A stretch of 64,000 nucleotides of DNA from Heptranchias perlo. Its lineage: Eukaryota. A program made the position numbers and the translations under genes. Below are positions 1-18,726 of the stretch, in pieces. The stretch is taken from NCBI RefSeq assembly GCF_035084215.1, contig NW_027139605.1, forward strand, positions 1-64,000, given 5' to 3'. Under the pieces are notes generated by a model. It did not search any database. It was not told the DNA's origin and saw nothing but the letters and a program-made list of their open reading frames with translations. Each line of letters starts with the position of its first letter. The first letter of the stretch is position 1.

Positions 1-410
1 TGGGGTTCATGCCCTGATCTCTCTCTCTCTGGGGTTGGTGTTTTGGGGTTCATGCCCTGATCTCTCTCTCTCTGGGGTTGGTGTTTTGGGGTTCATGCCC
101 TGATCTCTCTCTCTGGGGTTGGTGTTTTGGGGTTCATGCCCTGATCTCTCTCTCTCTGGGGTTGGTGTTTTGGGGTTCATGCCCTGATCTCTCTCTCTGG
201 GGTTGGTGTTTTGGGGTTCATGCCCTGATCTCTCTCTCTGGGGTTGGTGTTTTGGGGTTCATGCCCTGATCTCTCTCTCTCTCTGGGTTGGTGTTTTGGG
301 GTTCATGCCCTGATCTCTCTCTCTCTCGGTTGGTGTTTTGGGGTTCATGCCCTGATCTCTCTCTCTCTGGGTTGGTGTTTTGGGGTTCATGCCCTGATCT
401 CTCTCTCTCT
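1..410 (+). repeat. Intron 1 minisatellite, ~40-44 bp unit (TGGGGTTCATGCCCTGATC(TC)nTGGGGTTGGTGTTT)
   Basis: About 10 visible tandem copies with a variable TC run; runs off the window start. Confidence 0.95.
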
Positions 411-419
411 GTGTTTCAG

Positions 420-680
420 GCTCTCACTCTCTCCGGTATTTTTATACCTCAATGACCCCGATCCCTGGTTTTCCGGACTTTGTTGTTGTCGGTTATGTGG
501 ACGAGGCCCAGTTTGTTGAATATAACAGCGAGCGGAGGACGATGATCCCGCGGCAGCGCTGGATGGAGGAGCGTGAGGGGCCCGAGTACTGGGAACGGGA
601 CACACGGAATGTGCGGGGCGCGGAACGCATGGGGAAAGTCAATATTCAGACCCTCTCGACCCGGACCAACCAATCGGGCG
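420..680 (+). CDS. UAA: MHC class I exon 2 (alpha1 domain)
   Basis: Acceptor tgtttcag at 419, donor G|GTGAGT at 681. Translation (G)SHSLRYFYTSMTPIPGFPDFVVVGYVDEAQFVEYNSE...GPEYWERDT...IQTLSTRTNQSG; contains Y7, Y59, R84 and the N86 NQS glycosylation sequon. Confidence 0.96.
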
Positions 681-950: not shown

Positions 951-1082
951 CAGAGCGGGGTCTGAAGATGTCATCGATTAGAGGGCGGTCTGAGGGGAGG
1001 TGTCAGGGCGGTCCGGGGGGGAGAGGGGTGGTGCGGCCTAGGGAGGAGGGGGTCGAGGATCACTCCGCAGTATTCCTTCACT

Positions 1083-1475
1083 CTGACCCCTGACCCTGGG
1101 CGGGGGGTGTGGGTCTGACCCCTGACCCTGGGTGGGTGTTGTGGGTCTGACCCCTGACCCTGGGTGGGTGTTGTGGGTCTGACCCCTGACCCTGGGTGGG
1201 GGGTGTGGGTCTGACCCCTGACCTGGGCGGGGGGTGTGGGTCTGACCCCTGACCCTGGGCGGGGGGTGTGGGTCTGACCCCTGACCCTGGGCGGGGGGTG
1301 TGGGTCTGACCCCTGACCCTGGGCGGGGGGTGTGGGTCTGACCCCTGACCCTGGGCGGGGGGTGTGGGTCTGACCCCTGACCCTGGGTGGGGGGTGTGGG
1401 TCTGACCCCTGACCCTGGGTGGGGGGTGTGGGTCTGACCCCTGACCCTGGGTGGGGGGTGTGGGTCTGACTGACC
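1083..1475 (+). repeat. Intron 2 minisatellite, ~32 bp unit (CTGACCCCTGACCCTGGGYGGGGGGTGTGGGT)
   Basis: About 12 tandem copies directly visible. Confidence 0.95.
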
Positions 1476-1494: not shown

Positions 1495-1767
1495 GAATCC
1501 ACACGTATCAGGTGATGTACGGCTGTGAGCTGGGGGATGATGGGACCACGAGAGGGTTCGAGCAGCACGCCTGGGACGGGGAGGATTTGATCAACTTCGA
1601 TAAGGATCAGATGGTGTGGGTAACACCGGTACAGTGGGGAGAGATCACCAAGAACAAGTGGGACCAGGAAAAGGCCATGAACCAGCAGAGGAAGGGATAC
1701 CTGGAGGAGGAGTGCATCGAGTGGCTGAGGAAATACCTCGAGTACGGAAAGAGGGAACTGAGGGCCG
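1495..1767 (+). CDS. UAA: MHC class I exon 3 (alpha2 domain)
   Basis: Acceptor ttgacag at 1494, donor CCG|GTGAGT at 1768. GIHTYQVMYGCELG...AWDGEDLINFD...ITKNKWD...KGYLEEECIEWLRKYLEYG; contains C101/C164, T143, K146, W147, Y159, W167, Y171. Confidence 0.97.
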
Positions 1768-4700
1768 GTGAGTGAGGGGGGAGTGAGAGTCGGTGAGTGA
1801 GGGGGGGAACTGAGAGTCGGTGAGTGAGGGGGGAGTGAGAGTCGGTGAGTGAGGGGGGAGTGAGAGTCGGTGAGTGAGGGGGGAGTGAAGAGTCGGTGAG
1901 TGAGGGGGGGAGTGAGAGTCGGTGAGTGAGGGGGGAGTGAGAGTCGGTGAGAGAGGGGGGAGTGAAGAGTCGGTGAGAGAGGGGGGAGTGAACAGTCGGT
2001 GAGTGAGGGGGGGAGTGAGAGTCGGTGAGTGAGGGGGGAGTGAAGAGTCGGTGAGAGAGGGGGGAGTGAAGAGTCGGTGAGAGAGGGGGGAGTGAAGAGT
2101 CGGTGAGTGAGGGGGGGAGTGAGAGTCGGTGAGTGAGGGTGGGAGTGAGAGTCGGTGAGTGAGGGGGGGAGTGAGAGTCGGTGAGTGAGGGGGGAGTGAG
2201 AGTCGGTGAGAGAGGGGGGAGTGAAGAGTCGGTGAGAGAGGGGGGAGTGAACAGTCGGTGAGTGAGGGGGGGAGTGAGAGTCGGTGAGTGAGGGGGGAGT
2301 GAAGAGTCGGTGAGAGAGGGGGGAGTGAAGAGTCGGTGAGTGAGGGGGGGAGTGAGAGTCGGTGAGTGAGGGTGGGAGTGAGAGTCGGTGAGTGAGGGGG
2401 GGAGTGAGAGTCGGTGAGAGAGGGGGGAGTGAAGAGTCGGTGAGAGAGGGGGGAGTGAAGAGTCGGTGAGTGAGGGGGGGAGTGAGAGTCGGTGAGTGAG
2501 GGGGGGAGTGAGAGTCGGTGAGTGAGGGGGGAGTGAGAGTCGGTGAGTGAGGGGGGAGTGAAGAGTCGGTGAGAGAGGGGGGAGTGAAGAGTCGGTGAGA
2601 GAGGGGTGAGTGAAGAGTCGGTGAGTGAGGGGGGGAGTGAGAGTCGGTGAGTGAGGGGGGAGTGAAGAGTCGGTGAGAGAGGGGGGAGTGAAGAGTCGGT
2701 GAGTGAGGGGGGGAGTGAAGAGTCGGTGAGTGAGGGGGGGAGTGAAGAGTCGGTGAGTGAGGGGGGGAGTGAGAGTCGGTGAGTGAGGGTGGGAGTGAGA
2801 GTCGGTGAGTGAGGGGGGGAGTGAGAGTCGGTGAGAGAGGGGGGAGTGAAGAGTCGGTGAGAGAGGGGGGAGTGAAGAGTCGGTGAGTGAGGGGGGGAGT
2901 GAGAGTCGGTGAGTGAGGGGGGGAGTGAGAGTCGGTGAGTGAGGGGGGGAGTGAGAGTCGGTGAGTGAGGGGGGGACTGAGAGTCGGTGAGTGGGGGGGG
3001 AGTGAGAGTCGGTGAGTGAGGGTGGGAGTGAGAGTCGGTGAGTGAGGGTGGGAGTGAGAGTCGGTGAGTGAGGGTGGGAGTGAGAGTCGGTGAGTGAGGG
3101 TGGGAGTGAGAGTCGGTGATTGAGGGGGGAGGGTGGGTGAGTGAGGGAGGGGGAGTGAGAGTCGGTGAGTGAGTGAGGAGGGAGGGGGAGTGAGAGTCGG
3201 TGAGTGAATGGGGCGTGAGAGTCGGGGGGGGGGCGTGAGAGTCGGGGGGGGCGTGAGAGTCGGGGGGGGAGGGGTGAGACTCGGTGAGTGAGGGGGGGAG
3301 TGAGGGGGGAGGGTGAGTGAGGGGGGAGGGGGAGTGAGAGTCGGTGAGTGAGGGGGGGAGTGAGGGTCGGTGAGTGAGGGGGGAGGGGGAGTGAGGGTCG
3401 GTGAGTGAGGGTCGGTGAGTGAGGGGGGGGTGTGAGGGTCGGTGAGTGAGGGGGGAGGGGGAGTGAGGGTCGGGGAGTGAGGGTCGGGGAGTGAGGGGGG
3501 AGTGAGAGTCGGTGAGTGAGGGGGGAGTGAGAGTCGGGGGGGGAAGGGGTGAGAGTCGGGGGGGGAGGGGTGAGAGTCGGTGGGGGAGGGGGGGAGTGAG
3601 GGTCGGTGAGTGAGTGAGGGTCGGTGAATGAGGGTCGGTGAGTGAGGGGGGGGAGTCAGGGTCGGTGAGTGAGGGGGGGGAGTGAGGGTCGGTGAGTGAG
3701 GGTCGGTGAGTGAGGGGGAGGGGGAGTGAGGGGGTGAGTGAGGGTCGGTGAGTGAGGGGGGGAGTGAGGGTCGGTGAGTGAGGGGGGAGTGAGAGTCGGT
3801 GAGTGAGGGGGAGGGGGAGTGAGAGCAGGGGAGGGGTGAGAGTCAGTGAGTGAGGGGGGAGTGAGAGTCGACGGGGGAGGGATGAGAGTCGGTGACTGAG
3901 GGGGGAGGGGGAGTGAGAGTCGGTGAGTGAGGGGGGGGAGTGAGGGTCGGTGAGGGGGGGAGTGAGAGTCGGTGAGTGAGGGGGGAGTGAGAGTCGGTGA
4001 GTGAGGGGGGAGCGAAGAGTCGGTGAGTGAGGGGGGGAGTGAGAGTCGGTGAGTGAGGGGGGAGTGAAGAGTCGGTGAGTGAGGAGGGAGTGAAGAGTCG
4101 CTGAGTGAGGGTGGGAGTGAGAGTCGGTGAGAGAGGGGGGGAGTGAGAGGGGGGGAGTGAGAGTCGGTGAGTGAGGGGGGGAGTGAGAGTCGGTGAGTGA
4201 GGGTGGGAGTGAGAGTCGGTGAGTGAGGGGGGAGGGTGGGTGAGTGAGGGAGGGGGAGTGAGAGTCGGTGAGTGAGTGAGGAGGGAGGGGGAGTGAGAGT
4301 CGGTGAGTGAATGGGGCGTGAGAGTCGGGGGGGGCGTGACAGTCGGGGGGGCGTGAGAGTCGGGGTGGGAGGGGTGAGACTCGGTGAGTGAGGGTCGGTG
4401 AGTGAGGGGGGAGTGAGGGTCGGTGAGTGAGGGGAGGGGGAGTGAGGGTCGGTGAGTGAGGGGGGGAGTGAGGGTCGGTGAGTGAGGGGGGGCAGTGAGG
4501 GTCGGTGAGTGAAGGGGGAGGGGGAGTGAGGGTCGGGGAGTGAGGGTCGGGGAGTGAGGATCGGGGAGTGAGGGTCGGGGAGTGAGGGTCGGGGAGTGAG
4601 AGTCGGGGGGGAGGGGTGAGAGTCGGTGGGGGAGGGGGAGTGAGGGTCGGTGAGTGAGGGGGGGGAGTGAGGGTCGGTGAGTGAGGGGGGGAGTGAGGGT

Positions 4701-7700
4701 CGGTGAGTAAGTGGGGGGAGTGAGGGTCGGTGAGTGAGGGGGGGGAGTGAGAGTCGGTGAGTGAGGGGGGTGAGTGAGGGTTGGTGAGTGAGGGTCGGTG
4801 AGTGAGGGTCGGTGAGTGAGGGTCGGTGAGTGAGGGGGGGGAGTGAGGGTCGGTGAGTGAGGGTCGGTGAGTGAGGGGGGGGAGTGAGGGTCGGTGAGTG
4901 AGGGGGGGGAGTGAGGGTCGGTGAGTGAGGGGGGAGGGGGAGTGAGGGTCGGGGAGTGAGGGTCGGGGAGTGAGGGTCGGGGAGTGAGAGTCGGTGGGGG
5001 AGGGGGGGAGTGAGGGTCGGTGAGTGAGTGGGGGGGAGTGAGGGTCGGTGAGTGAGGGGGGGGGAGTGAGGGTCGGTGAGTGAGGGGGGAGTGAGGGTCG
5101 GTGAGTGAGTGGGGGGAGTGAGGGTCGGTGAGTGAGGGGGCGGGGAGTGAGAGTCGGTGAGTGAGGGGGGGGAGTGAGGGTTGGTGAGTGAGGGTCGGTG
5201 AGTGAGGGGGGGGAGTCAGGGTCGGTGAGTGAGGGGGGGGAGTGAGGGTCGGTGAGTGAGGGTCGGTGAGTGAGGGGGGGGAGTGAGGGTCGGTGAGTGA
5301 GGGGGGGGAGTGAGGGTCGGTGAGTGAGGGTCGGTGAGTGAGGGGGGTGAGTGAGGGTCGGTGAGTGAGGGTCGGTGAGTGTGGGGGGGGAGTGAGGGTC
5401 GGTGAGTGTGGGGGGGAGTGAGAGTCGGTGAGTGAGTGGGGGGAGTGAGGGTCGGTGAGTGAGGGGGGGGGAGTGAGAGTCGGTGAGTGAGGGGGGGGGA
5501 GTGAGGGTTGGTGAGTGAGGGGGGGGAGTGAGGGGGGGGAGTGAGGGGGGGGAGTGAGGGTCGGTGAGTGAGGGGGGTGAGTGAGGGTCGGTGAGTGAGG
5601 GGGGGAGTGAGGGTCGGTGAGTGAGGGGGGTGAGTGAGGGTCGGTGAGTGAGGGGGCAGAGTGAGGGTCGGTGAGTGGGGGGGGAGTGAGAGTCGGTGAG
5701 TGAGGGGGGGAGTGAGAGTCGGTGAGTGAGGGTGGGAGTGAGAGTCGGTGAGTGAGGGTGGGAGTGAGAGTCGGTGATTGAGGGGGGAGGGTGGGTGAGT
5801 GAGGGAGGGGGAGTGAGAGTCGGTGAGTGAGTGAGGAGGGAGGGGGAGTGAGAGTCGGTGAGTGAATGGGGCGTGAGAGTCGGGGGGGGGGGGCGTGAGA
5901 GTCGGGGGGGGCGTGAGAGTCGGGGGGGAGGGGTGAGACTCGGTGAGTGAGGGGGGGAGTGAGGGGGAGGGTGAGTGAGGGGGGAGGGGGAGTGAGGGTC
6001 GGTGAGTGAGGGGGGAGGGGGAGTGAGGGTCGGTGAGTGAGGGTCGGTGAGTGAGGGTCGGTGAGTGAGGGGGGGAGTGAGGGTCGGGGAGTGAGGGGGA
6101 GTGAGAGTCGGTGAGTGAGGGGGGAGTGAGAGTCGGGGGGGGAAGGGGTGAGAGTCGGGGGGGGAGGGGTGAGAGTCGGTGGGGGAGGGGGGGGAGTGAG
6201 GGTCGGTGAGTGAGTGAGGGTCGGTGAGTGAGGGTCGGTGAGTGAGGGGGGGGAGTCAGGGTCGGTGAGTGAGGGTCGGTGAGTGAGGGTCGGTGAGTGA
6301 GGGTCGGTGAGTGAGTGAGGGGGGGAGTGAGGGTCGGGGAGTGAGGGGGGGAGTGAGGGTCGATGAGTGAGGGGGGAGTGAGAGTCGGTGAGTGAGGGGG
6401 AGGGGGAGTGAGAGTCGGGGAGGGGTGAGAGTCAGTGAGTGAGGGGGGAGTGAGAGTCGACGGGGGAGGGATGAGAGTCGGTGAGTGAGGGGGGAGGGGG
6501 AGTGAGAGTCGGTGAGTGAGGGGGGGGAGTGAGGGTCGGTGAGGGGGGGAGTGAGAGTCGGTGAGTGAGGGGGGAGTGAGAGTCGGTGAGTGAGGGGGGA
6601 GGGGGAGTGAGAGTCGGTGAGTGAGGGGGGGGAGTGAGGGTCGGTGAGGGGGGGAGTGAGAGTCGGTGAGTGAGGGGGGAGTGAGAGTCGGTGAGTGAGG
6701 GGGGGAGTGACAGTCGGTGAGTGAGGGTGGGAGTGAGAGTCGGTGAGTGAGGGGGGAGGGTGGGTGAGTGAGGGAGGGGGAGTGAGAGTCGGTGAGTGAG
6801 TGAGGAGGGAGGGGGAGTGAGAGTCGGTGAGTGAGTGAGGAGGGAGGGGGAGTGAGAGTCGGTGAGTGAGGGGGTGAGGGGGGAGGGTGAGTGAGGGGGG
6901 AGGGTGAGTGAGGGGGGAGGGTGAGTGAGGGGGGAGGGTGAGTGAGGGTCGGTGAGTGAGGGGGGAGTGAGGGTCGGTGAGTGAGGGGGAGGGGGAGTGA
7001 GGGTCGGTGAGTGAGGGTCGGTGAGTGAGGGGGGGAGTGAGGGTCGGTGAGTGAGGGTCGGTGAGTGAGGGTCGGGGAGTGAGGGTCGGGGAGTGAGGGT
7101 TGGGGAGTGAGGGTCGGGGAGTGAGAGTCGGGGGGGAAGGGGTGAGAGTCGGGGGGGAGGGGTGAGAGTCGGTGGGGGAGGGGGGGGAGTGAGGGTCGGT
7201 GAGTGAGGGGGGCAGTGAGGGTCGGTGAGTGAGGGGGGGGAGTGAGGGTCGGTGAGTGAGTGGGGGGAGTGAGGGTCGGTGAGTGAGGGGGGGGAGTGAG
7301 GGTCGGTGAGTGAGGGTCGGTGAGTGAGGGGGGGGAGTCAGGGTCGGTGAGTGAGGGGGGGAGTGAGGGTCGGTGAGTGAGGGTCGGTGAGTGAGGGGGG
7401 GAGTGAGGGTCGGTGAGTGAGGGGGGGGAGTGAGGGTCGGTGAGTGTGGGGAGGGAGTGAGGGTCGGTGAGTGAGGGGGGAGGGGGAGTGAGGGTCGGGG
7501 AGTGAGGGTCGGGGAGTGAGGGTCGGTGAGTGAGGGGGGGAGTGAGGTCGGTGAGTGAGAGTCGGTGAGTGAGGGGGAGGGGGAGTGAGAGTCGGGGAGG
7601 GGTGAGAGTCAGTGAGTGAGGGGGGGAGTGAGAGTCGAGGGGGGAGGGATGAGAGTCGGTGAGTGAGGGGGGAGGGGGAGTTAGGGTCGGTGAGTGAGGG

Positions 7701-10700
7701 GGGAGGGGGAGTGAGGGTCGGTGAGTGAGGGGGGAGGGGGAGTGAGAGTCGGTGGGGGAGGGGGAGTGAGGGTCGGTGAGTGAGGGGGGAGTGAGAGTCG
7801 GTGAGTGAGGGGGGGAGTTAGAGTCGGTGAGTGAGGGGGGGAGTGAGGGGGAGTGAGAGTCGGTGAGTGAGGGGGGAGTGAGAGTCGGTGAGTGAGGGGG
7901 GGAGTGAGGGGGAGTGAGGGTCGGTGAGTGAGGGGGGAGTGAGGGTCGGTGAGTGAGGGGGGAGTGAGAGTCGGTGAGTGAGGGGGAGGGGGAGTGAGAG
8001 TCGGGGAGGGGTGAGAGTCGGTGAGTGAGGGGGGAGTGAGAGTCGGTGAGTGAGGGGGGGGAGTGAGGGTCGGTGAGTGAGGGTCGGTGAGTGAGGGGGG
8101 AGGGGGAGTGAGGGGGTGAGTGAGGGTCGGTGAGTGAGGGGGGGAGTGAGGGTCGATGAGTGAGGGGGGAGTGAGAGTCGGTGAGTGAGGGGGAGGGGGA
8201 GTGAGAGTCGGGGAGGGGTGAGAGTCAGTGAGTGAGGGGGGAGTGAGAGTCGACGGGGGAGGGATGAGAGTCGGTGAGTGAGGGGGGAGGGGGAGTGAGA
8301 GTCGGTGAGTGAGGGGGGGGAGTGAGGGTCGGTGAGGGGGGAGTGAGAGTTGGTGAGTGAGGGGGGAGTGAGAGTCGGTGAGTGAGGGTGGGAGTGAGAG
8401 TCGGTGAGTGAGGGTGGGAGTGAGAGTCGGTGAGTGAGGGTGGGAGTGAGAGTCGGTGAGTGAGGGGGGAGGGTGGGTGAGTGAGGGAGGGGGAGTGAGA
8501 GTCGGTGAGTGAGTGAGGAGGGAGGGGGAGTGAGAGTCGGTGAGTGAGTGAGGAGGGAGGGGGAGTGAGAGTCGGTGAGTGAATGGGGCGTGAGAGTCGG
8601 GGGGGAGGGGTGAGACTCGGTGAGTGAGGGGGTGAGTGAGGGGGGAGGGTGAGTGAGGGGGGAGGGTGAGTGAGGGTCGGTGAGTGAGGGGGGAGTGAGG
8701 GTCGGTGAGTGAGGGGGAGGGGGAGTGAGGGTCGGTGAGTGAGGGTCGGTGAGTGAGGGTCGGTGAGTGAGGGTCGGTGAGTGAGGGGGGAGGGGGAGTG
8801 AGGGTCGGGGAGTGAGGGTCGGGGGGGAAGGGGTGAGAGTCGGGGGGGAGGAGTGAGGGTCGGTGAGTGAGGGGGGGGAGTGAGGGTCGGTGAGTGAGGG
8901 GGGGAGTGAGGGTCGGTGAGTGAGGGTCGGTGAGTGAGGGGGGGGAGTGAGGGTCGGTGAGTCAGGGTCGGTGAGTGAGGGGGGGGAGTGAGGGTCGGTG
9001 AGTGAGGGTCGGTGAGTGAGGGGGGGGAGTGAGGGTCGGTGAGTGGGGGGGGGAGTGAGGGTCGGTGAGTGTGGGGAGGGAGTGAGGGTCGGTGAGTGAG
9101 GGGGGAGGGGAGTGAGGGTCGGTGAGTGAGGGGGAGTGAGAGTCGGTGAGTGAGGGGGAGGGGGAGTGAGAGTCGGGGAGGGGTGAGAGTCAGTGAGTGA
9201 GGGGGGAGTGAGAGTCAGGGGGGGAGTGAGAGTCGAGGGGGGAGGGATGAGAGTCGGTGAGTGAGGGGGGTTTGGGAGTGAGGGTCGGTGAGTGAGGGGG
9301 GAGGGGGAGTGAGGGTCGGTGAGTGAGGGGGAGGGGGAGTGAGAGTCGGTGAGTGAGGGGGGAGGGGGAGTGAGGGTCGGTGAGTGAGGGGGAGTGAGGG
9401 TCGGTGAGTGAGGGGGGAGTGAGAGTCGGTGAGTGAGGGGGGGAGTTAGAGTCGGTGAGTGAGGGGGGGAGTGAGAGTCGGTGAGTGAGGGGGGAGTGAG
9501 AGTCGGTGAGTGAGGGGGGGAGTGAGGGTCGGTGAGTGAGGGGGGGAGTGAGGGTCGGTGAGTGAGGGGGGAGTGAGGGTCGGTGAGTGAGGGGGAGTGA
9601 GGGTCGGTGAGTGAGGGGGGAGTGAGGGTCGGTGAGTGAGGGGGGAGTGAGAGTCGGTGAGTGAGGGGGAGGGGGATTGAGAGTCGGGGAGGGGTGAGAG
9701 TCGGTGAGTGAGGGGGGAGTGAGAGTCGGTGAGTTAGGGGGGAGTGAGAGTCAGGGGGAGTGAGAGTCGAGGGGGAGGGATGAGAGTCGGTGAGTGAGGG
9801 GGGAGGGGTAGTGAGAGTCGGTGAGTGAGGGGGGGAGTGAGAGTCGGTGAGTGAGGGGGGGGGAGTGAGGGTCGGTGAGTGAGGGGGGAGTGAGAGTCGG
9901 TGAGTGAGGGGGGAGGGGGAGTGAGGGGGGGGAGGGGGGTGAGAGTCGAGGGGTGAGGGTCGGTGAGTGAGGTTCGGTGAGTGAGGGGGAGGGGGAGTGA
10001 GGGTCGGTGAGTGAGGGGGAGGGGGAGTGAGGGTCGGTGAGTGAGGGTCGGTGAGTGAGGGGGGAGGGGGAGTGAGAGTCGGTGAGTGAGGGGGGAGTGA
10101 GATTCGGGGGGAGGGGTGAGAGTCGGTGAGTGAGGGGGGGAGTGAGAGTCGGTGAGTGAGGGGGGGGAGTGAGAGTCGGTGAGTGAGGGGGGGAGTGAGA
10201 GTCGGTGAGTGAGGGGGGGGAGTGAGAGTCGGTGAGTGAGGGGGGGAGTGAGAGTCGGTGAGTGAGGGGTGAGTGAGAGTCGGTGAGTGAGGGGGGAGGG
10301 GGAGTGAGCGTCGGTGAGTGAGGGGGGAGTGAGAGTCGGGGGGGGAGGGGTGAGGGTCGGTGAGTGAGGGTCGGGGAGTGAGAGTCGGTGAGTGAGGGGG
10401 GAGTGAGTCGGGGGGGGAGGGGTGAGAGTCGGGGGGGGGAGGGGTGAGAGTCGGGGGGGGAGGGGTGAGAGTCGGTGGGGGAGGGTGAGAGTCGGTGAGT
10501 GATGGGGGGAGTGAGGGTCGGGGAGTTAGGGTCGGGGAGTGAGGGGGGGTGAGTGAGGGGGGGTGAGTGAGGGTCGGGGAGTGAGGGTCGGGGAGTGAGG
10601 GTCGGTGAGTGAGGGGGGAAGTGAGGGTCGGTGAGTGAGGGGGGGAGTGAGGGTCGGTGAGTGAGGGGGGAGTGAGAGTCGCGGGGGGGGAGTGAGAGTC

Positions 10701-13700
10701 GAGGGGGGAGGGATGAGAGTCGGTGAGTGAGGGGGGAGGGGGAGTGAGAGTCGGTGAGTGAGGGGGGGAGTGAGGGTCGGTGAGTGAGGGGGGGAGTGAG
10801 GGTCGGTGAGTGAGGGGGGAGTGAGAGTCGGTGAGTGAGGGGGGAGTGAGAGTCAGCGAGTGAGGGGGGAGGGGGAGTGAGGGGGGAGGGGGAGTGAGGG
10901 GGGAGGGGGAGTGAGGGGGAGGGGTGAGAGTCGGGGGGGAGGGGGAGTCAGGGTCGGTGAGTGAGAGTCGGGGGGGAGGGGTGAGAGTCGGTGAGTGAGG
11001 GGGGGAGTGAGAGACGGTGAGTGAGGGGGGGGAGTGAGGGTCGGTGAGTAAGGGGGGGGAGTGAGGGTCGGTGAGTGAGGGGGGAGTGAGAGTCGGTGAG
11101 TGAGGGGGGGAGTGAGAGTCGCTGAGTGAGGGGGGGAGTGAGAGTCGGTGAGTGAGGGGGGGAGTGAGAGTCGGTGAGTGAGGGGGGAGTGAGAGTCGGT
11201 GAGTGAGGGGGGAGTGAGAGTCGGTGGGGGAGGGGGAGTGAGAGTCGGTGAGTGAGAGGGGAGGGGGAGTGAGCGTCGGTGAGTGAGAGTCGGGGGGGGA
11301 GGGGTGAGGGTCGGGGAGTGAGGGTCGGGGAGTGAGGGTCGGGGAGTGAGGGTCGGTGAGTGAGGGTGGGTGGGTGAGTGAGGGTGGGTGGGTGAGTGAG
11401 GGTGGGTGAGTGAGGGTGAGTGAGTGAGGGTGGGTGAGTGAGTGAGGGTGGGTGAGTGAGTGAGGGTGGGTGAGTGAGGGTGGGTGAGTGAGTGAGGGTG
11501 GGTGAGTGAGTGAGGGTGGGTGAGTGAGTGAGGGTGGGTGAGTGAGTGAGGGTGGGTGAGTGAGTGAGGGTGGGTGAGTGAGTGAGGGTGGGTGAGTGAG
11601 TGAGGGTGGGTGAGTGAGTGAGGGTGGGTGAGTGAGTGAGGGTGGGTGAGTGAGTGAGTGAGGGTGGGTGAGTGAGGGTGGGTGAGTGAAGATGGGTGAG
11701 TGAGGGGGAGGGGGAGTGAGAGTCGGTGAGTGAGGGGGGGAGTGAGAGTCGGTGTGAGGGGGGGGAGTGAGAGTCGGTGAGTGAGGGGGGGAGTGAGAGT
11801 CGGTGAGTGAGGGGGGGGAGTGAGAGTCGGTGAGTGAGGGGGGAGTGAGTCGGGGGGGGGAGTGAGAGTCGAGGGGGGAGGGGTGAGAGTCTGTGAGTGA
11901 GGGGGGAGTGAGAGTCGGTGAGTGAGGGGGGGGAGTGAGGGTCGGTGAGTGAGGGGGGGAGTGAGTGAGGGGGGAGTGAGAGTCGGTGAGTGAGGGGGGG
12001 TGTGAGGGTCGGTGAGTGAGGGGGGAGGGGGAGTGAGAGTCGGTGAGTGAGGGGGGAGGGGGAGTGAGGGGGAGGGGTGAGAGTCGGTGAGTGAGGGTCG
12101 GTGAGTGAGGGTCGGTGAGTGAGGGGAGGGGAGTGAGGATCGGTGAGTGAGGGGGGGAGTGAGGGTCGGTGAGTGAGGGGGGAGTGAGGGTCGGTGAGTG
12201 AGTGGGGGGAGTGAGGATCGGTGAGTGAGGGGGAGGGGGAGTGAGGGTCGGTGAGTGAGGGTCGGTGAGTGAGGGTCGGTGAGTGAGGGTCGGTGAGTGA
12301 GGGGGGAGGGGGAGTGAGAGTCGGTGAGTGAGGGGGGAGTGAGAGTTGGGGGGGAGGGGTGAGAGTCGGTGAGTGAGGGGGGGGAGTGAGGGGGGGGAGT
12401 GAGAGTCGGTGAGTGAGGGGGGGAGTGAGAGTCGGTGAGTGAGGGGGGAGTGAGAGTCGGTGGGGGAGGGGGAGTGAGAGTCGGTGGGGGAGGGGGGAGG
12501 GGGAGTGAGCGTCGGTGAGTGAGGGGGGAGTGAGAGTCGGGGGGAGGGGTGAGAGTCAGTGAGTGAGGGGGGGAGTGAGGGTCGGTGAGTGAGGGGGGGG
12601 AGTGAGGGTCGGTGAGTGAGGGTCGGTGAGTGAGGGTCGGTGAGCGAGGGTCGGTGAGCGAGGGTCGGTGAATGAGGGGGGGAGTGAGGGTCGGTGAGTG
12701 AGGGGGGAGGGGGAGTGAGAGTCGGTGAGTGAGGGGGGAGGGGGTGTGAGAGTCGGTGAGTGAGGGGGGAGGGGGAGTGAGAGTCGGTGAGTGAGGGGGG
12801 AGGGGGAGTGTGAGTCGGTGAGTGAGCGGGGAGTGAGAGTCGGGGGGGAGGGGTGAGAGTCGGTGAGTGAGGGGGGAGTGAGAGACGGTGAGTGAGGGGG
12901 GAGTGAGAGACGGTGAGTGAGGGGGGGAGTGAGAGTCGGTGAGTGAGGGGGGGAGTGAGGGTCGGTGAGTGAAGGGGGGAGTGAGGGTCGGTGAGTGAAG
13001 GGGGGAGTGAGAGTCGGTGAGTGAGGGGGGAGGGGGAGTGATCGTCGGTGAGTGAGGGGGGAGTGAGAGTCGGGGGGGGGAGAGGTGAGAGTCGGTGAGT
13101 GAGGGGGGAGTGAGAGACGGTGAGTGAGGGGTGGGAGTGAGGGGGGAGTGAGGGTCGGTGAGTGAGGGGGGGGGAATGAGAGTCGGTGAGTGAGGGGGGG
13201 GAATGAGAGTCGGTGAGTGAGGGGGGGGAGTGAGAGTCGGTGAGTGAGGGGGGGGAATGTGAGTCGGTGAGTGAGGGGGGGGAATGAGAGTCGGTGAGTG
13301 AGGGTCGGTGAGTGAGGGGGGAGTGAGGGTCGGTGAGTGAGGGTGGGGAATGAGAGTCGGTGAGTGAGGGGGGAGTGAGGGTCGGTGAGTGAGGGGGGAG
13401 TGAGGGTCAGTGAGTGAGGGGGGGAATGAGAGTCGGTGAGTGAGGGTCGGTGAGTGAGGGGGGAGTGAGGGTCGGTGAGTGAGGGGGGGAGTGAGGGTCG
13501 GTGAGTGAGGGGGGAATGAGAGTCGGTGAGTGAGGGGGGGAATGAGAGTCGGTGAGTGAGGGGGGGAGTGAGGGTCGGTGAGTCAGGTGGTGAGTGAGGG
13601 TCGGTGAGTGAGGGGGGGGGAGTGAGGGTCGGTGAGTGAGGGGGGGAGTGAGGGTCGGTGAGTGAGGGGGGGAGTGAGGGTCGGTGAGTGAGGGGGGGAA

Positions 13701-15515
13701 TGAGAGTCGGTGAGTGAGGGGGGGGAATGAGAGTCGGTGAGTGAGGGGGGAATGAGAGTCGGTGAGTGAGGGGGGAGTGAGGGTCGGTGAGTGAGGGGGG
13801 GGAATGAGAGTCGGTGAGTGAGGGGGGAATGAGAGTCGGTGAGTGAGGGGGGAGTGAGGGTCGGTGAGTGAGGGGGGGGAATGAGAGTCGGTGAGTGAGG
13901 GGGGGTGAGTGAGGGGGGGTGAGTGAGGGGGGGGGAGTGAGGGGGGGGAATGAGAGTCGGTGAGTGAGGGGGGGTGAGTGAGGGGGGGTGAGTGAGGGGG
14001 GGGAGTGAGGGGGGAGAGTGAGAGTCGGTGAGTGAGGGGGGTGAGTTAGGGGGGTGAGTGAGGGGGGGGAGTGAGAGTCGGTGAGTGAGGGGGGGAATGA
14101 GAGTCGGTGAGTGAGGGGGGGTGAGTGAGGGGGGGGGAGTGAGGGGGAGAGTGAGAGTCGGTGAGTGAGGGGGGTGAGTGAGGGGGGTGAGTGAGGGGGG
14201 GGAGTGAGGGGGGTGAGTGAGGGGGGGGAGTGAGAGTCGGTGAGTGAGGGGGGTGAGTGAGGGGGGTGAGTGAGGGGGGGGAGTGAGAGTCGGTGAGTGA
14301 GGGGGGGTGAGTGAGTGGGGGGAGTGAGGGGGGAGAGTGAGGGGGGGAATGAGAGTCGGTGAGTGAGGGGGGAATGAGAGTCGGTGAGTGAGGGGGGAGT
14401 GAGGGTCGGTGAGTGAGGGGGGGGAATGAGAGTCGGTGAGTGAGGGGGGAATGAGAGTCGGTGAGTGAGGGGGGAGTGAGGGTCGGTGAGTGAGGGGGGG
14501 AATGAGAGTCGGTGAGTGAGGGGGGTGAGTGAGGGGGGGGAGTGAGGGGGGAGAGTGAGGGGGGAGAGTGAGAGTCGGTGAGTGAGGGGGGGGAGTGAGG
14601 GGGGAGAGTGAGGGGGGGGAGTGAGAGTCGGTGAGTGAGGGGGGGAGTGAGAGTCGGTGAGTGAGGGGGGGGGAGTGAGGGGGGAGAGTGAGGGGGGGGA
14701 GTGAGGGGGGGGAGTGAGAGTCGGTGAGTGAGGGGGGGGAGTGAGAGTCGGTGAGTGAGGGGGGAGAGTGAGGGGGGAGAGTGAGGGGGGGGAGTGAGAG
14801 TCGGTGAGTGAGAGTCGGTGAGTGAGGGGGGAGAGTGAGAGTCGGTGAGTGAGGGGGGAGAGTGAGAGTCGGTGAGTGAGGGGGGAGAGTGAGAGTCGGT
14901 GAGTGAGGGGGGTGAGTGAGGGGGGAGAGTGAGAGTCGGTGAGTGAGGGGGGGGAGTGAGGGGGGAGAGTGAGAGTCGGTGAGTGAGGGGGGGGAGTGAG
15001 GGGGGAGAGTGAGGGGGGAGAGTGAGAGTCGGTGAGTGAGGGGGTGAGTGAGGGGGGTGAGTGAGAGTCGGTGAGTGAGGGGGAGAGTGAGAGTCGGTGA
15101 GTGAGGGGGGTGAGTGAGGGGGGTGAGTGAGGGGGGAGAGTGAGGGTCGGTGAGTGAGGGGGGTGAGTGAGGGGGGGAAGTGAGAGTCGGTGAGTGAGGG
15201 GGGGGAGTGAGGGGGGAGAGTGAGAGTCGGTGAGTGAGAGGGGGTGAGTGAGGGGGGAGAGTGAGAGTCGGTGAGTGAGGGGGGGGGAGTGAGGGGGGGG
15301 AGTGAGAGTCGGTGAGTGAGGGGGGTGAGTGAGGGGGGAGAGTGAGAGTCGGTGAGTGAGAGTCGGTGAGTGAGGGGGGTGAGTGAGGGGGGGAGTGAGG
15401 GTCGGTGAGCGAGGGGGGGAGTGAGGGTCGGTGAGTGAGGGGGGGGAATGAGAGTCGGTGAGTGAGTGAGGGGGGTGAGTGAGGGGGGTGAGTGAGGGGG
15501 GGAGTGAGGGGAGGG
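1768..15515 (+). repeat. Intron 3 G-rich satellite, ~25-30 bp unit (GAGTGAGRGTCGGTGAGTGAG(G)n)
   Basis: About 13.7 kb of continuous variant repeats, strongly G/purine-biased on the + strand, starting at the exon 3 donor. Confidence 0.98.
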
Positions 15516-15578
15516 AGGATTCTCTGCCTTGAGCTTCCTGTTCTTACTCCTCTTCCTCTTCCTCTCTCTGTCTCTCAG

Positions 15579-15842
15579 TTGCCCCTGTCGTGTATTTTAC
15601 CCGTCCGCCCGGGACTAACCGCCTGTCCTGTGCTGTCACTGGATTTTACCCTCGAGCCATCGAGGTGAATCTGCTGCGAGATGGAGAGTCCATCGAGGAG
15701 ACCCTGTCCAGTGGGACTTTGCCCAATCACGACGGCACCTACCAGGTCAGGAAATGGACGGAGTTTGAGGAGAAGGACGGGGCCCAGTATTCCTGTCAGG
15801 TGGATCACAGCGGGCTGGGGGAGAGGGTGCTGGTGTTTTATG
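15579..15842 (+). CDS. UAA: MHC class I exon 4 (alpha3 C1-set Ig domain)
   Basis: Long polypyrimidine tract plus ctctcag at 15578, donor G|GTAAGA at 15843. VAPVVYFTR...LSCAVTGFYPRAIEV...LPNHDGTYQVRKW...YSCQVDHSGL; C1-set motifs CxxxGFYP, PNxDGTYQ and YxCxVxH. Confidence 0.96.
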
Positions 15843-15920
15843 GTAAGACTGTCTCTCACTGTTATAGAGTCGATGTAGAAACTGATATTAATTGGCCGTC
15901 CTCTGTACAAGAGGGTCCAG

Positions 15921-17625
15921 TGTATCCTGGGATATTACAGTCCGACAGAGCCCGGTGTATCCTGGGATATTACAGTCTGACACGGCCCTCTGTACCCTGG
16001 GATATTACAGTCAGACAGGGCCCGCTGTATCCTGGGATATTACAGACCGACAGAGCCCGGTGTATCCTGGGATATTACAGTCTGACACGGCCCTCTGTAC
16101 CCTGGAATATTACAGACCGACAGGGCCCGCTGTATCCTGGGATATTACAGACCGACAGGGCCCGGTGTATCCTGGGATATTACAGACCGACAGGGCCCGC
16201 TGTATCCTGGGATATTACAGACCGACAGGGCCCGCTGTATCCTGGGATATTACAGACCGACAGGGCCCGGTGTATCCTGGGATATTACAGACCGACAGGG
16301 CCCGCTGTATCCTGGGATATTACAGACCAACAGGGCCCGTTGTATCCTGGGATATTACAGACCGACAGGGCCCGGTGTATCCTGGGATATTACAGACCGA
16401 CAGGGCCCGCTGTATCCTGGGATATTACAGACCGACAGGGCCCGGTGTATCCTGGGATATTACAGACCGACAGGGCCCGCTGTATCCTGGGATATTACAG
16501 ACCGACAGAGCCCGGTGTATCCTGGGATATTACAGACCGACAGGGCCCGCTGTATCCTGGGATATTACAGACCGACAGGGCCCGGTGTATCCTGGGATAT
16601 TACAGTATGACAGGGCCCGGTGTATCCTGGGATATTACAGTATGACAGGGCCCGGTGTATCCTGGGATATTACAGTACGACAGGGCCCGGTGTATCCTGG
16701 GATATTACAGACCGACAGGGCCCGCTGTATCCTGGGATATTACAGACCGACAGGGCCCGGTGTATCCTGGGATATTACAGACCGACAGGGCCCGCTGTAT
16801 CCTGGGATATTACAGACCGACAGAGCCCGGTGTATCCTGGGATATTACAGACCGACAGGGCCCGCTGTATCCTGGGATATTACAGACCGACAGGGCCCGG
16901 TGTATCCTGGGATATTACAGTATGACAGGGCCCGGTGTATCCTGGGATATTACAGTATGACAGGGCCCGGTGTATCCTGGGATATTACAGTCCGACAGGG
17001 CCCGGGGTATCCTGGGATATTACAGTCTGACGGGGCCCGCTGTATCCTGGGATATTACAGTATGACAGGGCCCGGTGTACCCTGGGATATTACAGTCCGA
17101 CGGGGCCCGCTGTATCCTGGGATATTACAGTCCGACGGGGCCCGCTGTATCCTGGGATATTACAGTCCGACGGGGCCCGCTGTATCCTGGGATATTACAG
17201 ACCGACAGGGCCCGGTGTATCCTGGGATATTACAGACCGACAGGGCCCGCTGTATCCTGGGATATTACAGACCGACAGAGCCCGGTGTATCCTGGGATAT
17301 TACAGTATGACAGGGCCCGGTGTATCCTGGGATATTACAGTATGACAGGGCCCGGTGTATCCTGGGATATTACAGTCCGACAGGGCCCGGGGTATCCTGG
17401 GATATTACAGTCCGACGGGGCCCGCTGTATCCTGGGATATTACAGTATGACAGGGCCCGGTGTACCCTGGGATATTACAGTCCGACGGGGCCCGCTGTAT
17501 CCTGGGATATTACAGTCCGACGGGGCCCGCTGTATCCTGGGATATTACAGTCCGACGGGGCCCGCTGTATCCTGGGATATTACAGTCCGACGGGGCCCGC
17601 TGTATCCTGGGATATTACAGTCTGA
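15921..17625 (+). repeat. Intron 4 minisatellite A, 35 bp unit (TGTATCCTGGGATATTACAGACCGACAGGGCCCGS)
   Basis: Highly homogeneous tandem copies, roughly 48 by length/period. Confidence 0.97.
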
Positions 17626-17758
17626 CAGCGACCGGCCCTGAGGATCTGTAAAGATTGTCCCTGTGCCTCACCCACAGAGACTCTGCTTTATTCAGTGGAT
17701 CCGGCTGTATAGGGCGAATATGGGGACTGGACTCGGAATCCAAAATGGGTCAACTGGT

Positions 17759-18317
17759 GGGGTCTGGTCCTGGGTGCCCCCCAGTACGGTATTAATCCTT
17801 GTACTGTCTACGGGGTCTGGTGCTGGGTGCCCCCAGTACGGTATTAATCCTTGTACTGTCTACGGGGTCTGGTGCTGGGTGCCCCCCAGTATGGTATTAA
17901 TCCTTGTACTGTCTACGGGGTCTGGTGCTGGGTGCCCCCCAGTATGGTATTAATCCTTGTACTGTCTACGAGGTCTGGTGCTAGGTGCCCCCCAGTACGG
18001 TATTAATCCTTGTACTGTCTACGGGGTCTGGTGCTGGGTGCCCCCCAGTATGGTATTAATCCTTGTACTGTCTACGGGGTCTGGTGCTGGGTGCCCCCCA
18101 GTACGGTATTAATCCTTGTACTGTCTACGGGGTCTGGTGCTGGGTGCCTCCCAGTATGGTATTAATCCTTGTACTGTCTACAGGGTCTGGTGCTGGGTGC
18201 CCCCCAGTACGGTATTAATCCTTGTACTGTCTACGGGGTCTGGTGCTGGGTGCCCCCCAGTACGGTATTAATCCTTGTACTGTCTACGGGGTCTGGTGCT
18301 GGGTGCCTCCCAGTACG
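17759..18317 (+). repeat. Intron 4 minisatellite B, ~53 bp unit (GGGGTCTGGTGCTGGGTGCCCCCCAGTACGGTATTAATCCTTGTACTGTCTAC)
   Basis: About 10 tandem copies. Confidence 0.95.
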
Positions 18318-18479
18318 ATACCAAACTTCTCTCTCTTTGATCCTCGACGGGTCATTCTGTGTCTGTCTCGCTCTGTGTCATTCTCTCTGTGTCTGTCTTG
18401 CTCTCTGCCTATCTGGTTCTGTGTCTCAGTCTGTCTGTCTGGTCCCTGACGGGTGACTGTCTGTTTCTGTGTGACTCGC

Positions 18480-18726
18480 TCTCTCTCTCTCTCCCTCTCT
18501 CCCTCTCTCTGATCTCCGATGTGTGACTCTCTCTCTGATCCCAGATGTGTGACTCTCTCCCTCTCTCTGATCCCCGATGTCTGACTCTCTCTCTCTCTCT
18601 CTCTCTGATCCCCGATGTCTGACTCTCTCTCTCTCTCTCTCTCCCTCTCCCTCCCTGATCCCCATTGTGTCTCTGTCTGTCTCTCTGATCCCCGATGTCT
18701 GACTCTCTCTCTCTCTCTCTCTCTCT
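18480..18726 (+). repeat. Intron 4 CT-rich repeat (TCTCTGATCCCCGATGTCTGAC(TC)n) abutting the exon 5 acceptor
   Basis: About 6 degenerate copies; the last copy forms the branch point and polypyrimidine tract. Confidence 0.8.

What the first reader, a model, noticed from the sequence alone, without database searches (positions are those of the whole stretch)
1750..15578. 13.8-kb intron made of hundreds of copies of its own 5' splice donor
Seen: the exon 3 end reads GGAACTGAGGGCCG|GTGAGTGAGGGGG. An early repeat copy (~1806-1830, GGAACTGAGAGTCG|GTGAGTGAGGG) is almost a copy of this junction, and the whole array reiterates TCG|GTGAGT several hundred times (estimated from the ~25-30 bp period). The first decoy lies 25 nt downstream, at 1793. 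Use of any decoy would include the in-frame TGA at 1773-1775, giving an alpha1-alpha2-only product or an NMD target. The array has no polypyrimidine tract until ~15520. Established: G|GTGAGT is a consensus U1 donor, and intronic G-runs bind hnRNP H/F. Inference: the satellite arose by amplification of the exon/intron junction. It could act as a U1-loading or splice-competition array whose copy number tunes class I expression.
Basis: partly seen in the sequence, partly recalled or inferred. Interest (0 to 1): 0.8.

Follow-up and report, generated by a model that had tools for sequence, protein, structure and literature searches.

The report
Splice-donor minisatellite filling shark MHC intron
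In a shark MHC class I gene, a 13.8-kb intron is almost entirely a tandem repeat that grew out of its own exon/intron junction, so about 450 near-copies follow the real splice donor; this kind of repeat is known from a few human genes at 5-26 copies, and the RNA available shows only the real donor in use.

Summary
Observation confirmed. The window holds a classical-type shark MHC class I gene. Its alpha2-alpha3 intron (1768-15578, 13,811 nt) is 99.6% one minisatellite of 14/25-27-nt units. It holds 494 GTGAGT, 449 G|GTGAGT and 371 TCG|GTGAGT; it is 63% G and 4% C, with no pyrimidine tract before 15520. The TGA at 1773-1775 and the first decoy at 1793 are as stated.

The origin claim is supported. 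Junction positions -15..+14 form one repeat unit, 26/29 identical to the array consensus. Unit 2 keeps the exon's GGAACTGAG. The exon end encodes ELR, which a nurse shark class I also has, so the exon came first.

The function claim is not supported, though it remains untested. RNA contigs from one sample cover exactly the alpha2 exon. They break only at 1767 and give no depth over five decoys. The donor T's are among the least conserved unit positions. Every intron here carries minisatellites, and two of them reiterate the branch point and pyrimidine tract.

The kind is known. In human F7, IFI6, CBS, LMNB2 and PDGF, minisatellites reiterate a donor, and usually only the most upstream site is used. 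This case is 20-100 times larger.

The scan flagged an 18-kb analogue on another piece of this genome (s1-883218); I could not check it. Interest is moderate.

The parts
420..680 (+). MHC class I alpha1 exon (phase 1); donor GCG|GTGAGT at 681
   Evidence: Pfam MHC_I 3e-26; borders read from the sequence; RNA loose ends before 1495 equal this exon's 3' end
   Evidence: Pfam MHC_I 7e-29; best solved relative is nurse shark class I 6lup_A, 3e-38; RNA contigs cover exactly 1495-1767
1753..1781 (+). First monomer of the minisatellite. It spans the exon/intron boundary: 15 exon nt, then the authentic donor CCG|GTGAGT, then a G run.
   Evidence: 26/29 identical to the array consensus in register; the exon half is the best match among 845 exon windows
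1759..1778 (+). Two TGAGGG motifs (1759-1764 and 1773-1778), 14 nt apart, flanking the donor. This is the likely slippage seed of the 14-nt period.
   Evidence: the TRF period-14 consensus is TGAGGGTCGGTGAG; GTGAGTGAGGGTCG is the commonest single unit, with 37 copies
1793..1798 (+). First decoy donor, TCG|GTGAGT, 25 nt downstream of the authentic one
1803..1831 (+). Second unit, a hybrid that keeps the exon-type GGAACTGAG (1806-1814)
   Evidence: GGAACTGAG/AACTGAG occurs only once in the intron; 12/14 identical to the exon end
1759..15517 (+). Donor-reiterating minisatellite. There are about 470-520 units of 14/25-27/30-31 nt and 181 distinct unit types. It is 63% G on the sense strand and shows block duplications at lags 259, 417 and about 1,700-1,800 nt.
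   Evidence: TRF; unit census; repeated 80-mers; per-kb profile
1768..3100 (+). Very regular 5' part of the array, with a higher-order repeat of about 10 units (about 260 nt) and local variants (GTGAGAGAG, GAAGAGTCG)
   Evidence: unit string ...AEFDCEEDGDAEFDCEDGD...; lag 259
15518..15578 (+). The only non-repeat part of the intron: branch-point-like CTTAC (A at 15546), a 23-nt pyrimidine tract and the acceptor AG
15579..15842 (+). alpha3 (Ig C1-set) exon
   Evidence: Pfam C1-set 4.8e-16; one RNA contig joins an alpha2 end to TTGCCCCTGTCGTG..., which is this exon's start
1..411 (+). Intron-1 minisatellite (41-43 nt, at least 10 copies, running off the window). Its last unit supplies the branch-point-like CTGAT and the (CT)n tract of the alpha1 acceptor.
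1082..1470 (+). Intron-2 minisatellite (32 nt x12) with CTGAC motifs, ending 24 nt before the alpha2 acceptor
15912..18726 (+). Intron-4 arrays: 35 nt x49, 53 nt x10, and a CT-rich 26-38-nt array that runs to within about 7 nt of the TM-exon acceptor
18732..18833 (+). Transmembrane exon
   Evidence: read from the sequence
18889..20070 (+). Intron-5 G-rich minisatellite (31 nt x38). It starts 55 nt after the donor and is not donor-derived.
20280..20312 (+). Short cytoplasmic exon (33 nt); donor CGA|GTAAGT
   Evidence: read from the sequence

Best explanation
This is a minisatellite whose first monomer spans the alpha2 exon/intron boundary. It has grown until it makes up 99.6% of the intron.

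Origin.
- Shown: the junction is itself one unit of the repeat, and the exon part is ancestral coding sequence.
- Inferred: slippage or unequal exchange between the two TGAGGG motifs that flank the donor, 14 nt apart, duplicated TGAGGGCCGGTGAG. The 14-nt and 25-27-nt units then multiplied by unit and block duplication (260-nt and kb-scale blocks) to about 13.75 kb. This happened in a locus or genome where every intron breeds minisatellites.

The roughly 450 donor copies are passengers of that growth, not a device.

How splicing survives (inferred from human precedents).
- The most upstream donor is committed first, through exon definition with the alpha2 acceptor and co-transcriptional 'first come' or 5'-to-3' scanning.
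- The copies lie in G-run-dense sequence with no pyrimidine tract, so they cannot form internal exons.
- hnRNP H/F-type binding to the G runs may compact the intron.
- Any leak from a decoy carries the in-frame TGA at 1773 and would be an NMD target.

Likely side effects (inferred, untested): several extra minutes of transcription per mRNA, R-loop and G-quadruplex proneness of the G-rich sense strand, and length polymorphism.
For: Junction and origin.
- The junction is one unit: 26/29 identical.
- The in-register exon match has an empirical chance rate of about 5e-4 to 1e-3.
- The exon-type second unit is unique in the intron.
- TGAGGG motifs lie 14 nt apart, equal to the TRF period of 14.
- ELR at the exon end is shared with nurse shark class I.

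Growth of the array.
- Block duplications and 181 unit types are typical of unequal exchange.

No sign of selection on the donors.
- T at +2 is 85% conserved and T at +6 is 84%, among the lowest in the unit (only -5, +12 and +13 are lower).
- The commonest losses are G-ward, to GGGAGT and GGGGGG.

The other introns of the gene.
- They hold arrays too, and those of introns 1 and 4 reiterate the branch point and pyrimidine tract up to 6-8 nt from the acceptor.

RNA.
- Depth is confined to 1495-1767 and is zero at 1771-1900.
- Loose ends at 1767/1769 (one at 1765) read into alpha3 exon starts; the few other loose ends are single contigs of adapter or variant sequence inside the exon.

Precedents.
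- In F7 IVS7 the first monomer spans the boundary. The pseudo-sites are functional but silent, and the most upstream site is always chosen.
- The same architecture occurs in IFI6, CBS, LMNB2 and PDGF (PMC1557585).
- hnRNP F/H sites improve splicing of enlarged introns (PMC1326234).
Against: - The RNA evidence is from assembled contigs of one sample. Contigs drop rare variants, a filter may remove repeats, and NMD would hide decoy use.
- Reads from paralogues cannot be separated. The only contig reaching this window's alpha3 start has AG rather than CG at 1766-1767, so correct splicing of this exact copy is not shown directly.
- 477 sites are as good as most real donors of the gene. Silence of all of them is assumed from mammalian work, not shown in sharks.
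- An unchecked scan note reports an 18-kb analogue at another class I gene. If the array is old and retained in several genes, pure neutrality becomes less comfortable.
- Array length was not verified with DNA reads.
Confidence: 0.68

Rival explanations
1. A functional splice-regulatory array. The hundreds of U1-type sites and G runs load U1 snRNP and hnRNP H/F on the nascent RNA. Copy number then sets splicing efficiency, decoy/NMD loss or transcription, and so tunes class I level.
For: - The decoys are nearly as strong as the real site: 7/9 against 8/9 consensus matches, with 14 sites at 8/9.
- They start 25 nt downstream, within exon-definition range.
- F7 intron-7 repeat number is reported to correlate with mRNA level (PMC3492156).
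- A CBS VNTR is associated with enzyme activity (reference list of PMC1557585).
- An unchecked note reports a second, 18-kb array in another class I gene of the same genome.
Against: - No decoy junction and no intronic words appear in RNA contigs despite very high exon depth.
- The donor positions are not preferentially conserved.
- Arrays fill all introns of the gene regardless of what they reiterate.
- In F7 the pseudo-sites do not compete with the upstream site (PMC1557585).
- The array holds no AATAAA or ATTAAA, so protection against premature polyadenylation is not needed there.
Confidence: 0.12
2. The DNA or RNA structure matters, not the donors. A 13.75-kb, 63% G sense strand forms R-loops and G-quadruplexes when transcribed. 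It would act as a transcription brake or intron delay. Alternatively it would act as a recombination hotspot that uncouples the peptide-binding exons (alpha1, alpha2) from alpha3-TM and promotes exon shuffling among class I genes.
For: - GC skew is +0.85 to +0.93 over the whole array.
- The sense strand holds 68 canonical G4 motifs and the other strand none, with about 530 G runs of 5 nt or more.
- RNA contigs join the same alpha2 3' end to two different alpha3 starts, TTACTCC... and TTGCCCC.... This is compatible with shuffling, or simply with a conserved exon end in paralogues.
- From general knowledge: minisatellites are known meiotic recombination hotspots, and G-rich sense strands promote R-loops.
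Against: - Nothing here measures R-loops, elongation or recombination.
- There is no AGCT and almost no WRC motif, so it is not switch-region-like as an AID target.
- Transcripts carrying this exon are very abundant, which argues against a strong block. Which paralogue they come from is unknown.
Confidence: 0.1
3. The array is real but its assembled length or arrangement is partly an assembly artefact (an over-expanded or mis-joined satellite).
For: - Another satellite in the window contains N runs at 27180-27399 and 27460-27967, so satellites were hard to assemble or were masked.
- No DNA reads could be laid on the array.
Against: - There are 181 distinct unit types, ordered local variants and non-trivial block structure along the whole array. 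This is not a collapsed or copied consensus.
- Both flanks join cleanly to exons in frame.
Confidence: 0.08

Closest known systems
Human F7 (factor VII) intron 7 37-bp VNTR
   Same: - The first monomer spans the exon/intron boundary, so the donor is reiterated downstream.
- The pseudo-sites are competent but silent, and the most upstream site is used (PMC1557585).
- Repeat number is reported to correlate with mRNA level (PMC3492156).
- Here too the junction is unit 1, and only the first site is seen in RNA.
   Different: - F7 has 5-9 copies (about 0.2-0.3 kb) with identical pseudo-sites. Here there are about 450-500 copies (13.75 kb), and the decoys differ from the real site at -3 (T for C).
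- The F7 monomer takes 4 exon nt; here it takes about 15.
- F7's site is the weak UGG/gugggu; here it is a strong G|GTGAGT.
- No functional tests exist for the shark gene.
Human IFI6 (6-16) exon 2/intron 2 minisatellite
   Same: A minisatellite reiterates the splice donor: the authentic site is followed by 25 pseudo-sites (described in PMC1557585, citing Turri et al. 1995).
   Different: [quoted passage not shown]
- Here any decoy use includes a TGA, and none was seen in contigs.
[quoted passage not shown] 1997, cited in PMC1557585)
   Same: [quoted passage not shown]
   Different: LMNB2 has 10-15 copies of a 100-bp monomer. The shark array has a short unit, is about 10 times longer and has extreme G content.
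Intronic G-run splicing enhancers / hnRNP F/H binding sites
   Same: G runs lie just downstream of the donor and throughout the intron. hnRNP F/H sites stimulate splicing of enlarged introns and modulate 5' splice-site choice (PMC1326234).
   Different: These are normally a few G triplets near intron ends. Here there are about 530 runs of 5 or more G. Binding was not tested.
Immunoglobulin switch regions (resemblance only)
   Same: Both are kilobase-scale intronic tandem repeats that start just after a donor and are G-rich on the sense strand, hence prone to R-loops (general knowledge).
   Different: This array has no AGCT and almost no WRC motif, lies in an MHC gene and has no recombination partner. 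It is not a member.

Membership tests
Exon/intron-junction-reiterating minisatellite (F7 IVS7 / IFI6 / LMNB2 type) | A tandem array abuts the donor, and its first monomer spans the exon/intron boundary | tested here: met
   TRF starts the array at 1759, inside the exon. Positions -15..+14 are 26/29 identical to the unit consensus. The chance rate of the exon half is about 5e-4 to 1e-3.
Exon/intron-junction-reiterating minisatellite (F7 IVS7 / IFI6 / LMNB2 type) | The donor consensus is reiterated in the downstream monomers | tested here: met
   There are 449 G|GTGAGT and 371 TCG|GTGAGT, and 477 sites with at least 7/9 matches to MAG|GTRAGT. The authentic site scores 8/9.
Exon/intron-junction-reiterating minisatellite (F7 IVS7 / IFI6 / LMNB2 type) | Mature RNA uses the most upstream site (or only the first few sites) | tested here: inconclusive
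   Contigs of four RNA runs from one sample stop at 1767 and give zero depth over 1771-1900. Contigs cannot show absence of rare forms, paralogues are mixed in, and NMD could hide decoy products.
Exon/intron-junction-reiterating minisatellite (F7 IVS7 / IFI6 / LMNB2 type) | Copy-number polymorphism (VNTR behaviour) | not testable with these tools
This needs long DNA reads from several individuals.
Classical-type MHC class I heavy-chain gene | MHC_I alpha1 and alpha2 domains, a C1-set alpha3 and a TM exon, in phase-1 exons | tested here: met
   Pfam; exon phases and the TM exon read from the sequence; the best solved relative is nurse shark class I 6lup_A. Exons were searched one by one, and the joined model was not searched.
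Classical-type MHC class I heavy-chain gene | Conserved residues that bind the peptide termini (Y7, Y59, R/Y84, T143, K146, W147, Y159, Y171) | tested here: met
   Read off the exon translations: RYFYT, PEYWE, LSTRTNQ, EITKNKW, KGYLE, RKYLEYG. The numbering is by my own alignment to the human scheme, not a tool output.
Immunoglobulin switch-like region | Dense AGCT/WRCY hotspots in a G-rich sense-strand repeat | tested here: not met
   AGCT 0, WRCY 1 and WRC 13 in 13,750 nt. Only the G-rich repeat character is shared.

The most novel reading that the evidence does not exclude
The donor-derived array is kept in several class I genes of this shark (an 18-kb version is noted, unchecked, on another piece) because it does something that depends on length. 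One possibility is that it is a U1/hnRNP H-coated or R-loop-forming intron that sets the amount or timing of class I mRNA. The other is that it is a recombination hotspot that lets the peptide-binding exons be reshuffled onto different alpha3-TM backbones.
Probability: 0.12. Interest if true: 0.7.

Novelty: new member of a known kind. Interest (0 to 1): 0.4.

Why it matters
As it stands, this is a natural extreme of a known oddity. A strong, highly used splice donor is followed by about 450 near-equal copies over 13.75 kb, in a gene family that RNA shows to be very highly expressed.

That makes it a ready-made test of how 5' splice sites are chosen: first-come or scanning, as opposed to site strength or proximity to the acceptor. 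It also tests how a vertebrate cell transcribes and splices through a 63% G sense strand.

It warns annotators of shark genomes in two ways. MHC introns can be almost pure satellite. The antisense strand of this array also carries stop-free frames of up to 1,862 codons that a gene caller could mistake for genes.

If array length varied between alleles and affected expression, it would add a new layer to MHC polymorphism. Nothing here shows that.

Tried and rejected
1. Comparators from other sharks or paralogues.
- The search for homologous proteins with the alpha2 exon (90 aa) gave a single 109-aa eukprot hit. The length window (0.55-1.75x) excludes full-length class I.
- The age and spread of the array therefore remain untested.

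2. Scan notes.
- The 'near' and 'relatives' look-ups were blank.
- Word and genome look-ups gave titles only.

3. Literature.
- I found no paper in the library on minisatellite introns in shark MHC.
- Two searches failed on syntax.

4. Simple higher-order periodicity.
- Autocorrelation shows only lags 4, 14, 26, 52 and 78, plus weak kb-scale lags.
- The array is a patchwork of block duplications, not one higher-order repeat.

5. Selection on donors.
- Positional conservation anchored on TCG shows no excess at GT or +6.
- Concerted evolution makes this a weak test.

6. Splice-site scoring.
- MaxEntScan tables are not available offline. I used matches to MAG|GTRAGT instead.

7. Other readings considered and set aside.
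- Telescripting: there are no poly(A) signals in the array.
- A switch-region analogy: there is no AGCT.

8. Read laying.
The 1767-to-15579 joint could therefore only be seen as loose ends.

Full report
WHAT IS THERE

The first 20.3 kb of the window carry an MHC class I heavy-chain gene on the + strand.
- Pfam finds MHC_I in the translations of 422-679 (3e-26) and 1497-1766 (7e-29), and C1-set in 15581-15841 (4.8e-16).
- The exons were searched one at a time.
- Read from the sequence, the exons are alpha1 420-680, alpha2 1495-1767, alpha3 15579-15842, TM 18732-18833 and a 33-nt cytoplasmic exon 20280-20312. All are in phase 1.
- The leader exon lies upstream of the window.
- The closest solved structure to the alpha2 exon is the nurse shark class I chain 6lup_A (3e-38).
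- The residues that bind the peptide termini are all present (my reading of the translations), so the gene is of classical type.
- The rest of the window holds LINE reverse-transcriptase fragments (RVT_1 1e-36) and large satellites. Earlier notes of the scan on other pieces of this genome also call it a shark.

- The alpha2-alpha3 intron is 1768-15578, 13,811 nt.
- TRF calls one array at 1759-15517, with period 26 x519 and period 14 x1021. That is 13,750 nt, or 99.6% of the intron.
- The array contains 494 GTGAGT, 449 GGTGAGT and 371 TCGGTGAGT. TCGGTGAGT is absent from the other 50 kb of the window.
- Composition is 63% G, 18% A, 15% T and 4% C, with GC skew about +0.87 throughout.
- No pyrimidine run longer than 3 nt occurs before 15520.
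- The last 61 nt are the only unique part. They hold a branch-point-like CTTAC (A at 15546), a 23-nt pyrimidine tract and the AG.
- Reading through the donor gives Gly, Glu, then TGA at 1773-1775. The first decoy GT is at 1793. The copy at 1806-1830 with GGAACTGAG is real and unique.
- Donor-like sites run at about 27-50 per kb from end to end. The median spacing is 26 nt and the largest gap is 145 nt.

STRENGTH OF THE DECOYS

- The measure is matches to MAG|GTRAGT. MaxEntScan tables were not available.
- The authentic site CCG|GTGAGT scores 8/9.
- 463 intronic GT sites score 7/9 and 14 score 8/9.
- The gene's other real donors in the window score 6-7/9.
- The main decoy differs from the real site only at -3 (T for C).

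ORIGIN

I aligned all 449 G|GTGAGT sites in register.
- The consensus from -15 to +14 is GGGGAGTGAGGGTCG|GTGAGTGAGGGGGG.
- The authentic junction is GGGAACTGAGGGCCG|GTGAGTGAGGGGGG. It is identical at 26 of 29 positions and differs only at -12, -10 and -3. The junction is therefore itself one unit of the repeat, with about 15 nt contributed by the exon.
- As a chance control, the 12/15 match of the exon half is the single best among 845 windows in the four exons. Matches this good occur in 13 of 27,178 windows elsewhere, and 9 of those lie in one G-rich repeat.
- The second unit (1803-1831) carries the exon-type GGAACTGAG, which occurs nowhere else in the intron.
- The exon end encodes E-L-R-A. 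Nurse shark class I ends its alpha2 domain with ELR, and the Leu is general in vertebrate class I. The exon sequence is therefore old coding sequence and the array derives from it, not the reverse.

A plausible seed is visible at the junction.
- TGAGGG occurs at 1759 and again at 1773. These are 14 nt apart and flank the donor.
- 14 nt is the shorter TRF period, and GTGAGTGAGGGTCG is the commonest single unit, with 37 copies.

Later growth was by unit and block duplication.
- There are 181 unit types.
- Repeated 80-mers occur at lags 259, 417 and about 1,700-1,800 nt.
- A block of about 10 units (about 260 nt) is repeated right next to the exon.

Within this window there is no other copy.

CONTEXT: EVERY INTRON HERE IS FULL OF MINISATELLITES

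- Intron 1 holds a 41-43-nt unit in at least 10 copies. Its last unit supplies the CTGAT and (CT)n of the alpha1 acceptor and ends 8 nt before the exon.
- Intron 2 holds a 32-nt unit x12 with CTGAC motifs.
- Intron 4 holds a 35-nt unit x49, a 53-nt unit x10 and a CT-rich array that runs to about 7 nt from the TM acceptor.
- Intron 5 holds a 31-nt G-rich array x38 that starts 55 nt after the donor and does not copy it.
- First-stage notes on other pieces of this genome describe the same habit ('intron ends amplified into minisatellites', s1-883304 and s1-883307). They also describe an 18-kb donor-derived satellite in another class I gene (s1-883218). I could not check those pieces.
- The donor array therefore looks like one product of a general mutational tendency, seeded by low-complexity sequence at intron ends. 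It does not look like a one-off device.

RNA

- The run search found four runs of one sample that hold 54-62% of the sampled words of 1471-1900. The alpha2 exon makes up 61-63% of that stretch, depending on whether 31-nt words or bases are counted.
- Laid on that stretch, their contigs cover 1495-1767 and nothing else. Summed word depth in the exon bins mostly lies between 10^4 and 6x10^5. It is zero in every bin from 1771 to 1900, which includes five decoys, and zero at 1471-1485.
- Loose ends before 1495 read GGACCAACCAATCGGGC, the 3' end of the alpha1 exon. The runs are therefore spliced RNA.
- Loose ends behind 1767 read TTACTCCCCAAG..., a different alpha3 exon and hence a paralogue or allele.
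- One contig continues from 1765 with AG+TTGCCCCTGTCGTG..., which is this window's alpha3 start. It has a synonymous A at 1766, hence a CAG|GT donor in that copy.
- No loose end lies at 1792, 1819, 1844, 1869 or 1895.
- Limits. These are contigs, which drop rare forms. A filter may remove repeats, and three rows were not shown. Paralogues are pooled, and NMD would remove decoy products. The result therefore says 'only the authentic position is seen'. It does not say 'decoys are never used'.

NO SIGN OF SELECTION ON THE DONORS

- I anchored the units on TCG, which is independent of the donor.
- T at +2 is conserved in 85% of 487 units and T at +6 in 84%. Most other positions stand at 88-100%; only -5, +12 and +13 are lower.
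- The commonest losses are G-ward, to GGGAGT and GGGGGG.
- Concerted evolution weakens this test, but it gives no hint that donor function is being kept.

HOW IT MOST LIKELY WORKS

The architecture is known. Borensztajn et al. [quoted passage not shown]
- F7 intron 7: 37 bp x5-9.
- IFI6/6-16: 25 pseudo-sites.
- CBS intron 13: 15-20 repeats.
- LMNB2: 100 bp x10-15.
- PDGF: 81 bp x16-18.

In F7 they show that the pseudo-sites are functional but never compete. [quoted passage not shown] Exon skipping rises as the first usable site moves away.

Applied here (inference):
- The alpha2 exon is defined by its acceptor and the first donor at 1768.
- The copies lie in sequence with no pyrimidine tract and no exonic context, so they cannot form pseudo-exons.
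- The dense G runs may bind hnRNP F/H, which improves splicing of enlarged introns and influences 5' site choice (PMC1326234).
- Any leak carries the TGA at 1773.

Expected side effects are also inference.
- There would be minutes of extra transcription time.
- The sense strand would be prone to R-loops and G4. It holds 68 canonical G4 motifs and the other strand none.
- It has no AGCT or WRC motifs, so it does not resemble a switch region as an AID target.
- It has no AATAAA or ATTAAA, so U1 'telescripting' is not needed there.

RIVALS

F7 repeat number is reported to correlate with mRNA level (PMC3492156, citing Pinotti et al. 2000). It has no support in this locus.
- A structural or recombinational role is possible but unmeasured.
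- The assembled length is unverified. Another satellite in the window contains N runs, but the ordered diversity of units argues against an artefact.

VERDICT

- The origin inference is supported.
- The functional inference is unsupported, though not excluded.
- This is a new and by far the largest member of a known kind of repeat. It sits in a new lineage and gene family, and it is probably one of several in this genome.
- It is of moderate interest, mainly as a natural experiment in 5' splice-site choice and in transcription through extreme G-rich repeats.

Noticed in passing
window 41861-64000: A purine-rich satellite of more than 22 kb (24-26-nt unit AGAGAGAGAGAGCGAGCGAGCGGATC, about 880 copies, AT skew +0.77) runs off the 3' end of the window. 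It is larger than the MHC intron array and has no obvious gene context.
   Followed up: no
window 1-411, 1082-1470, 18475-18726: Minisatellites at the 3' ends of introns 1, 2 and 4 reiterate branch-point-like CTGAT/CTGAC plus pyrimidine tracts. Two of them run to within 6-8 nt of the real acceptor. The copies lack the AG (for example TTTTGG in place of TTTCAG).
   Followed up: partly
window 1765-1767 (RNA contigs): RNA contigs join the same alpha2 3' end to two different alpha3 exons, TTACTCCCCAAG... (most contigs) and TTGCCCCTGTCG... (this window's type). The latter has A instead of C at 1766, which gives a perfect CAG|GT donor in that allele or paralogue. So there are several expressed class I genes with near-identical alpha2 ends.
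   Followed up: partly
window 1768-15517, minus strand: T before A and C before A are rare on the + strand. As a result the antisense strand of the array has stop-free frames of 1,002-1,862 codons. The intron-5 array likewise gives 464-477-aa proline-rich ORFs. These are compositional artefacts that ORF-based gene callers could report as proteins.
   Followed up: yes
window 26712-29445: A TG-rich 22-24-nt satellite (GTGTGTGTCTGTCTCCGAGTGTGT) is interrupted by two N runs (27180-27399 and 27460-27967). I left these as they are.
   Followed up: no
window 20800-41800: Nested, mostly broken LINE copies lie on both strands. One example is a 494-aa ORF at 38151-39635(-) with RVT_1 at 1e-36. They share 3' tails ending ...GGCCGAATGGCCTACTCCTG, and short satellites derived from the element flanks lie between them (39-nt unit at 29962-30542 and 32154-32509).
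   Followed up: partly
window 18889-20070: The intron-5 31-nt array (GGGAGGGGGAGGAGGGGGCCCATGGAGTGAG) has two sub-families, CCCATGGAGTGAG then CCCAGGGTGTGAG/CCCTGGGTGTGAG, arranged in blocks. It is another G-rich sense-strand repeat just downstream of a donor.
   Followed up: no
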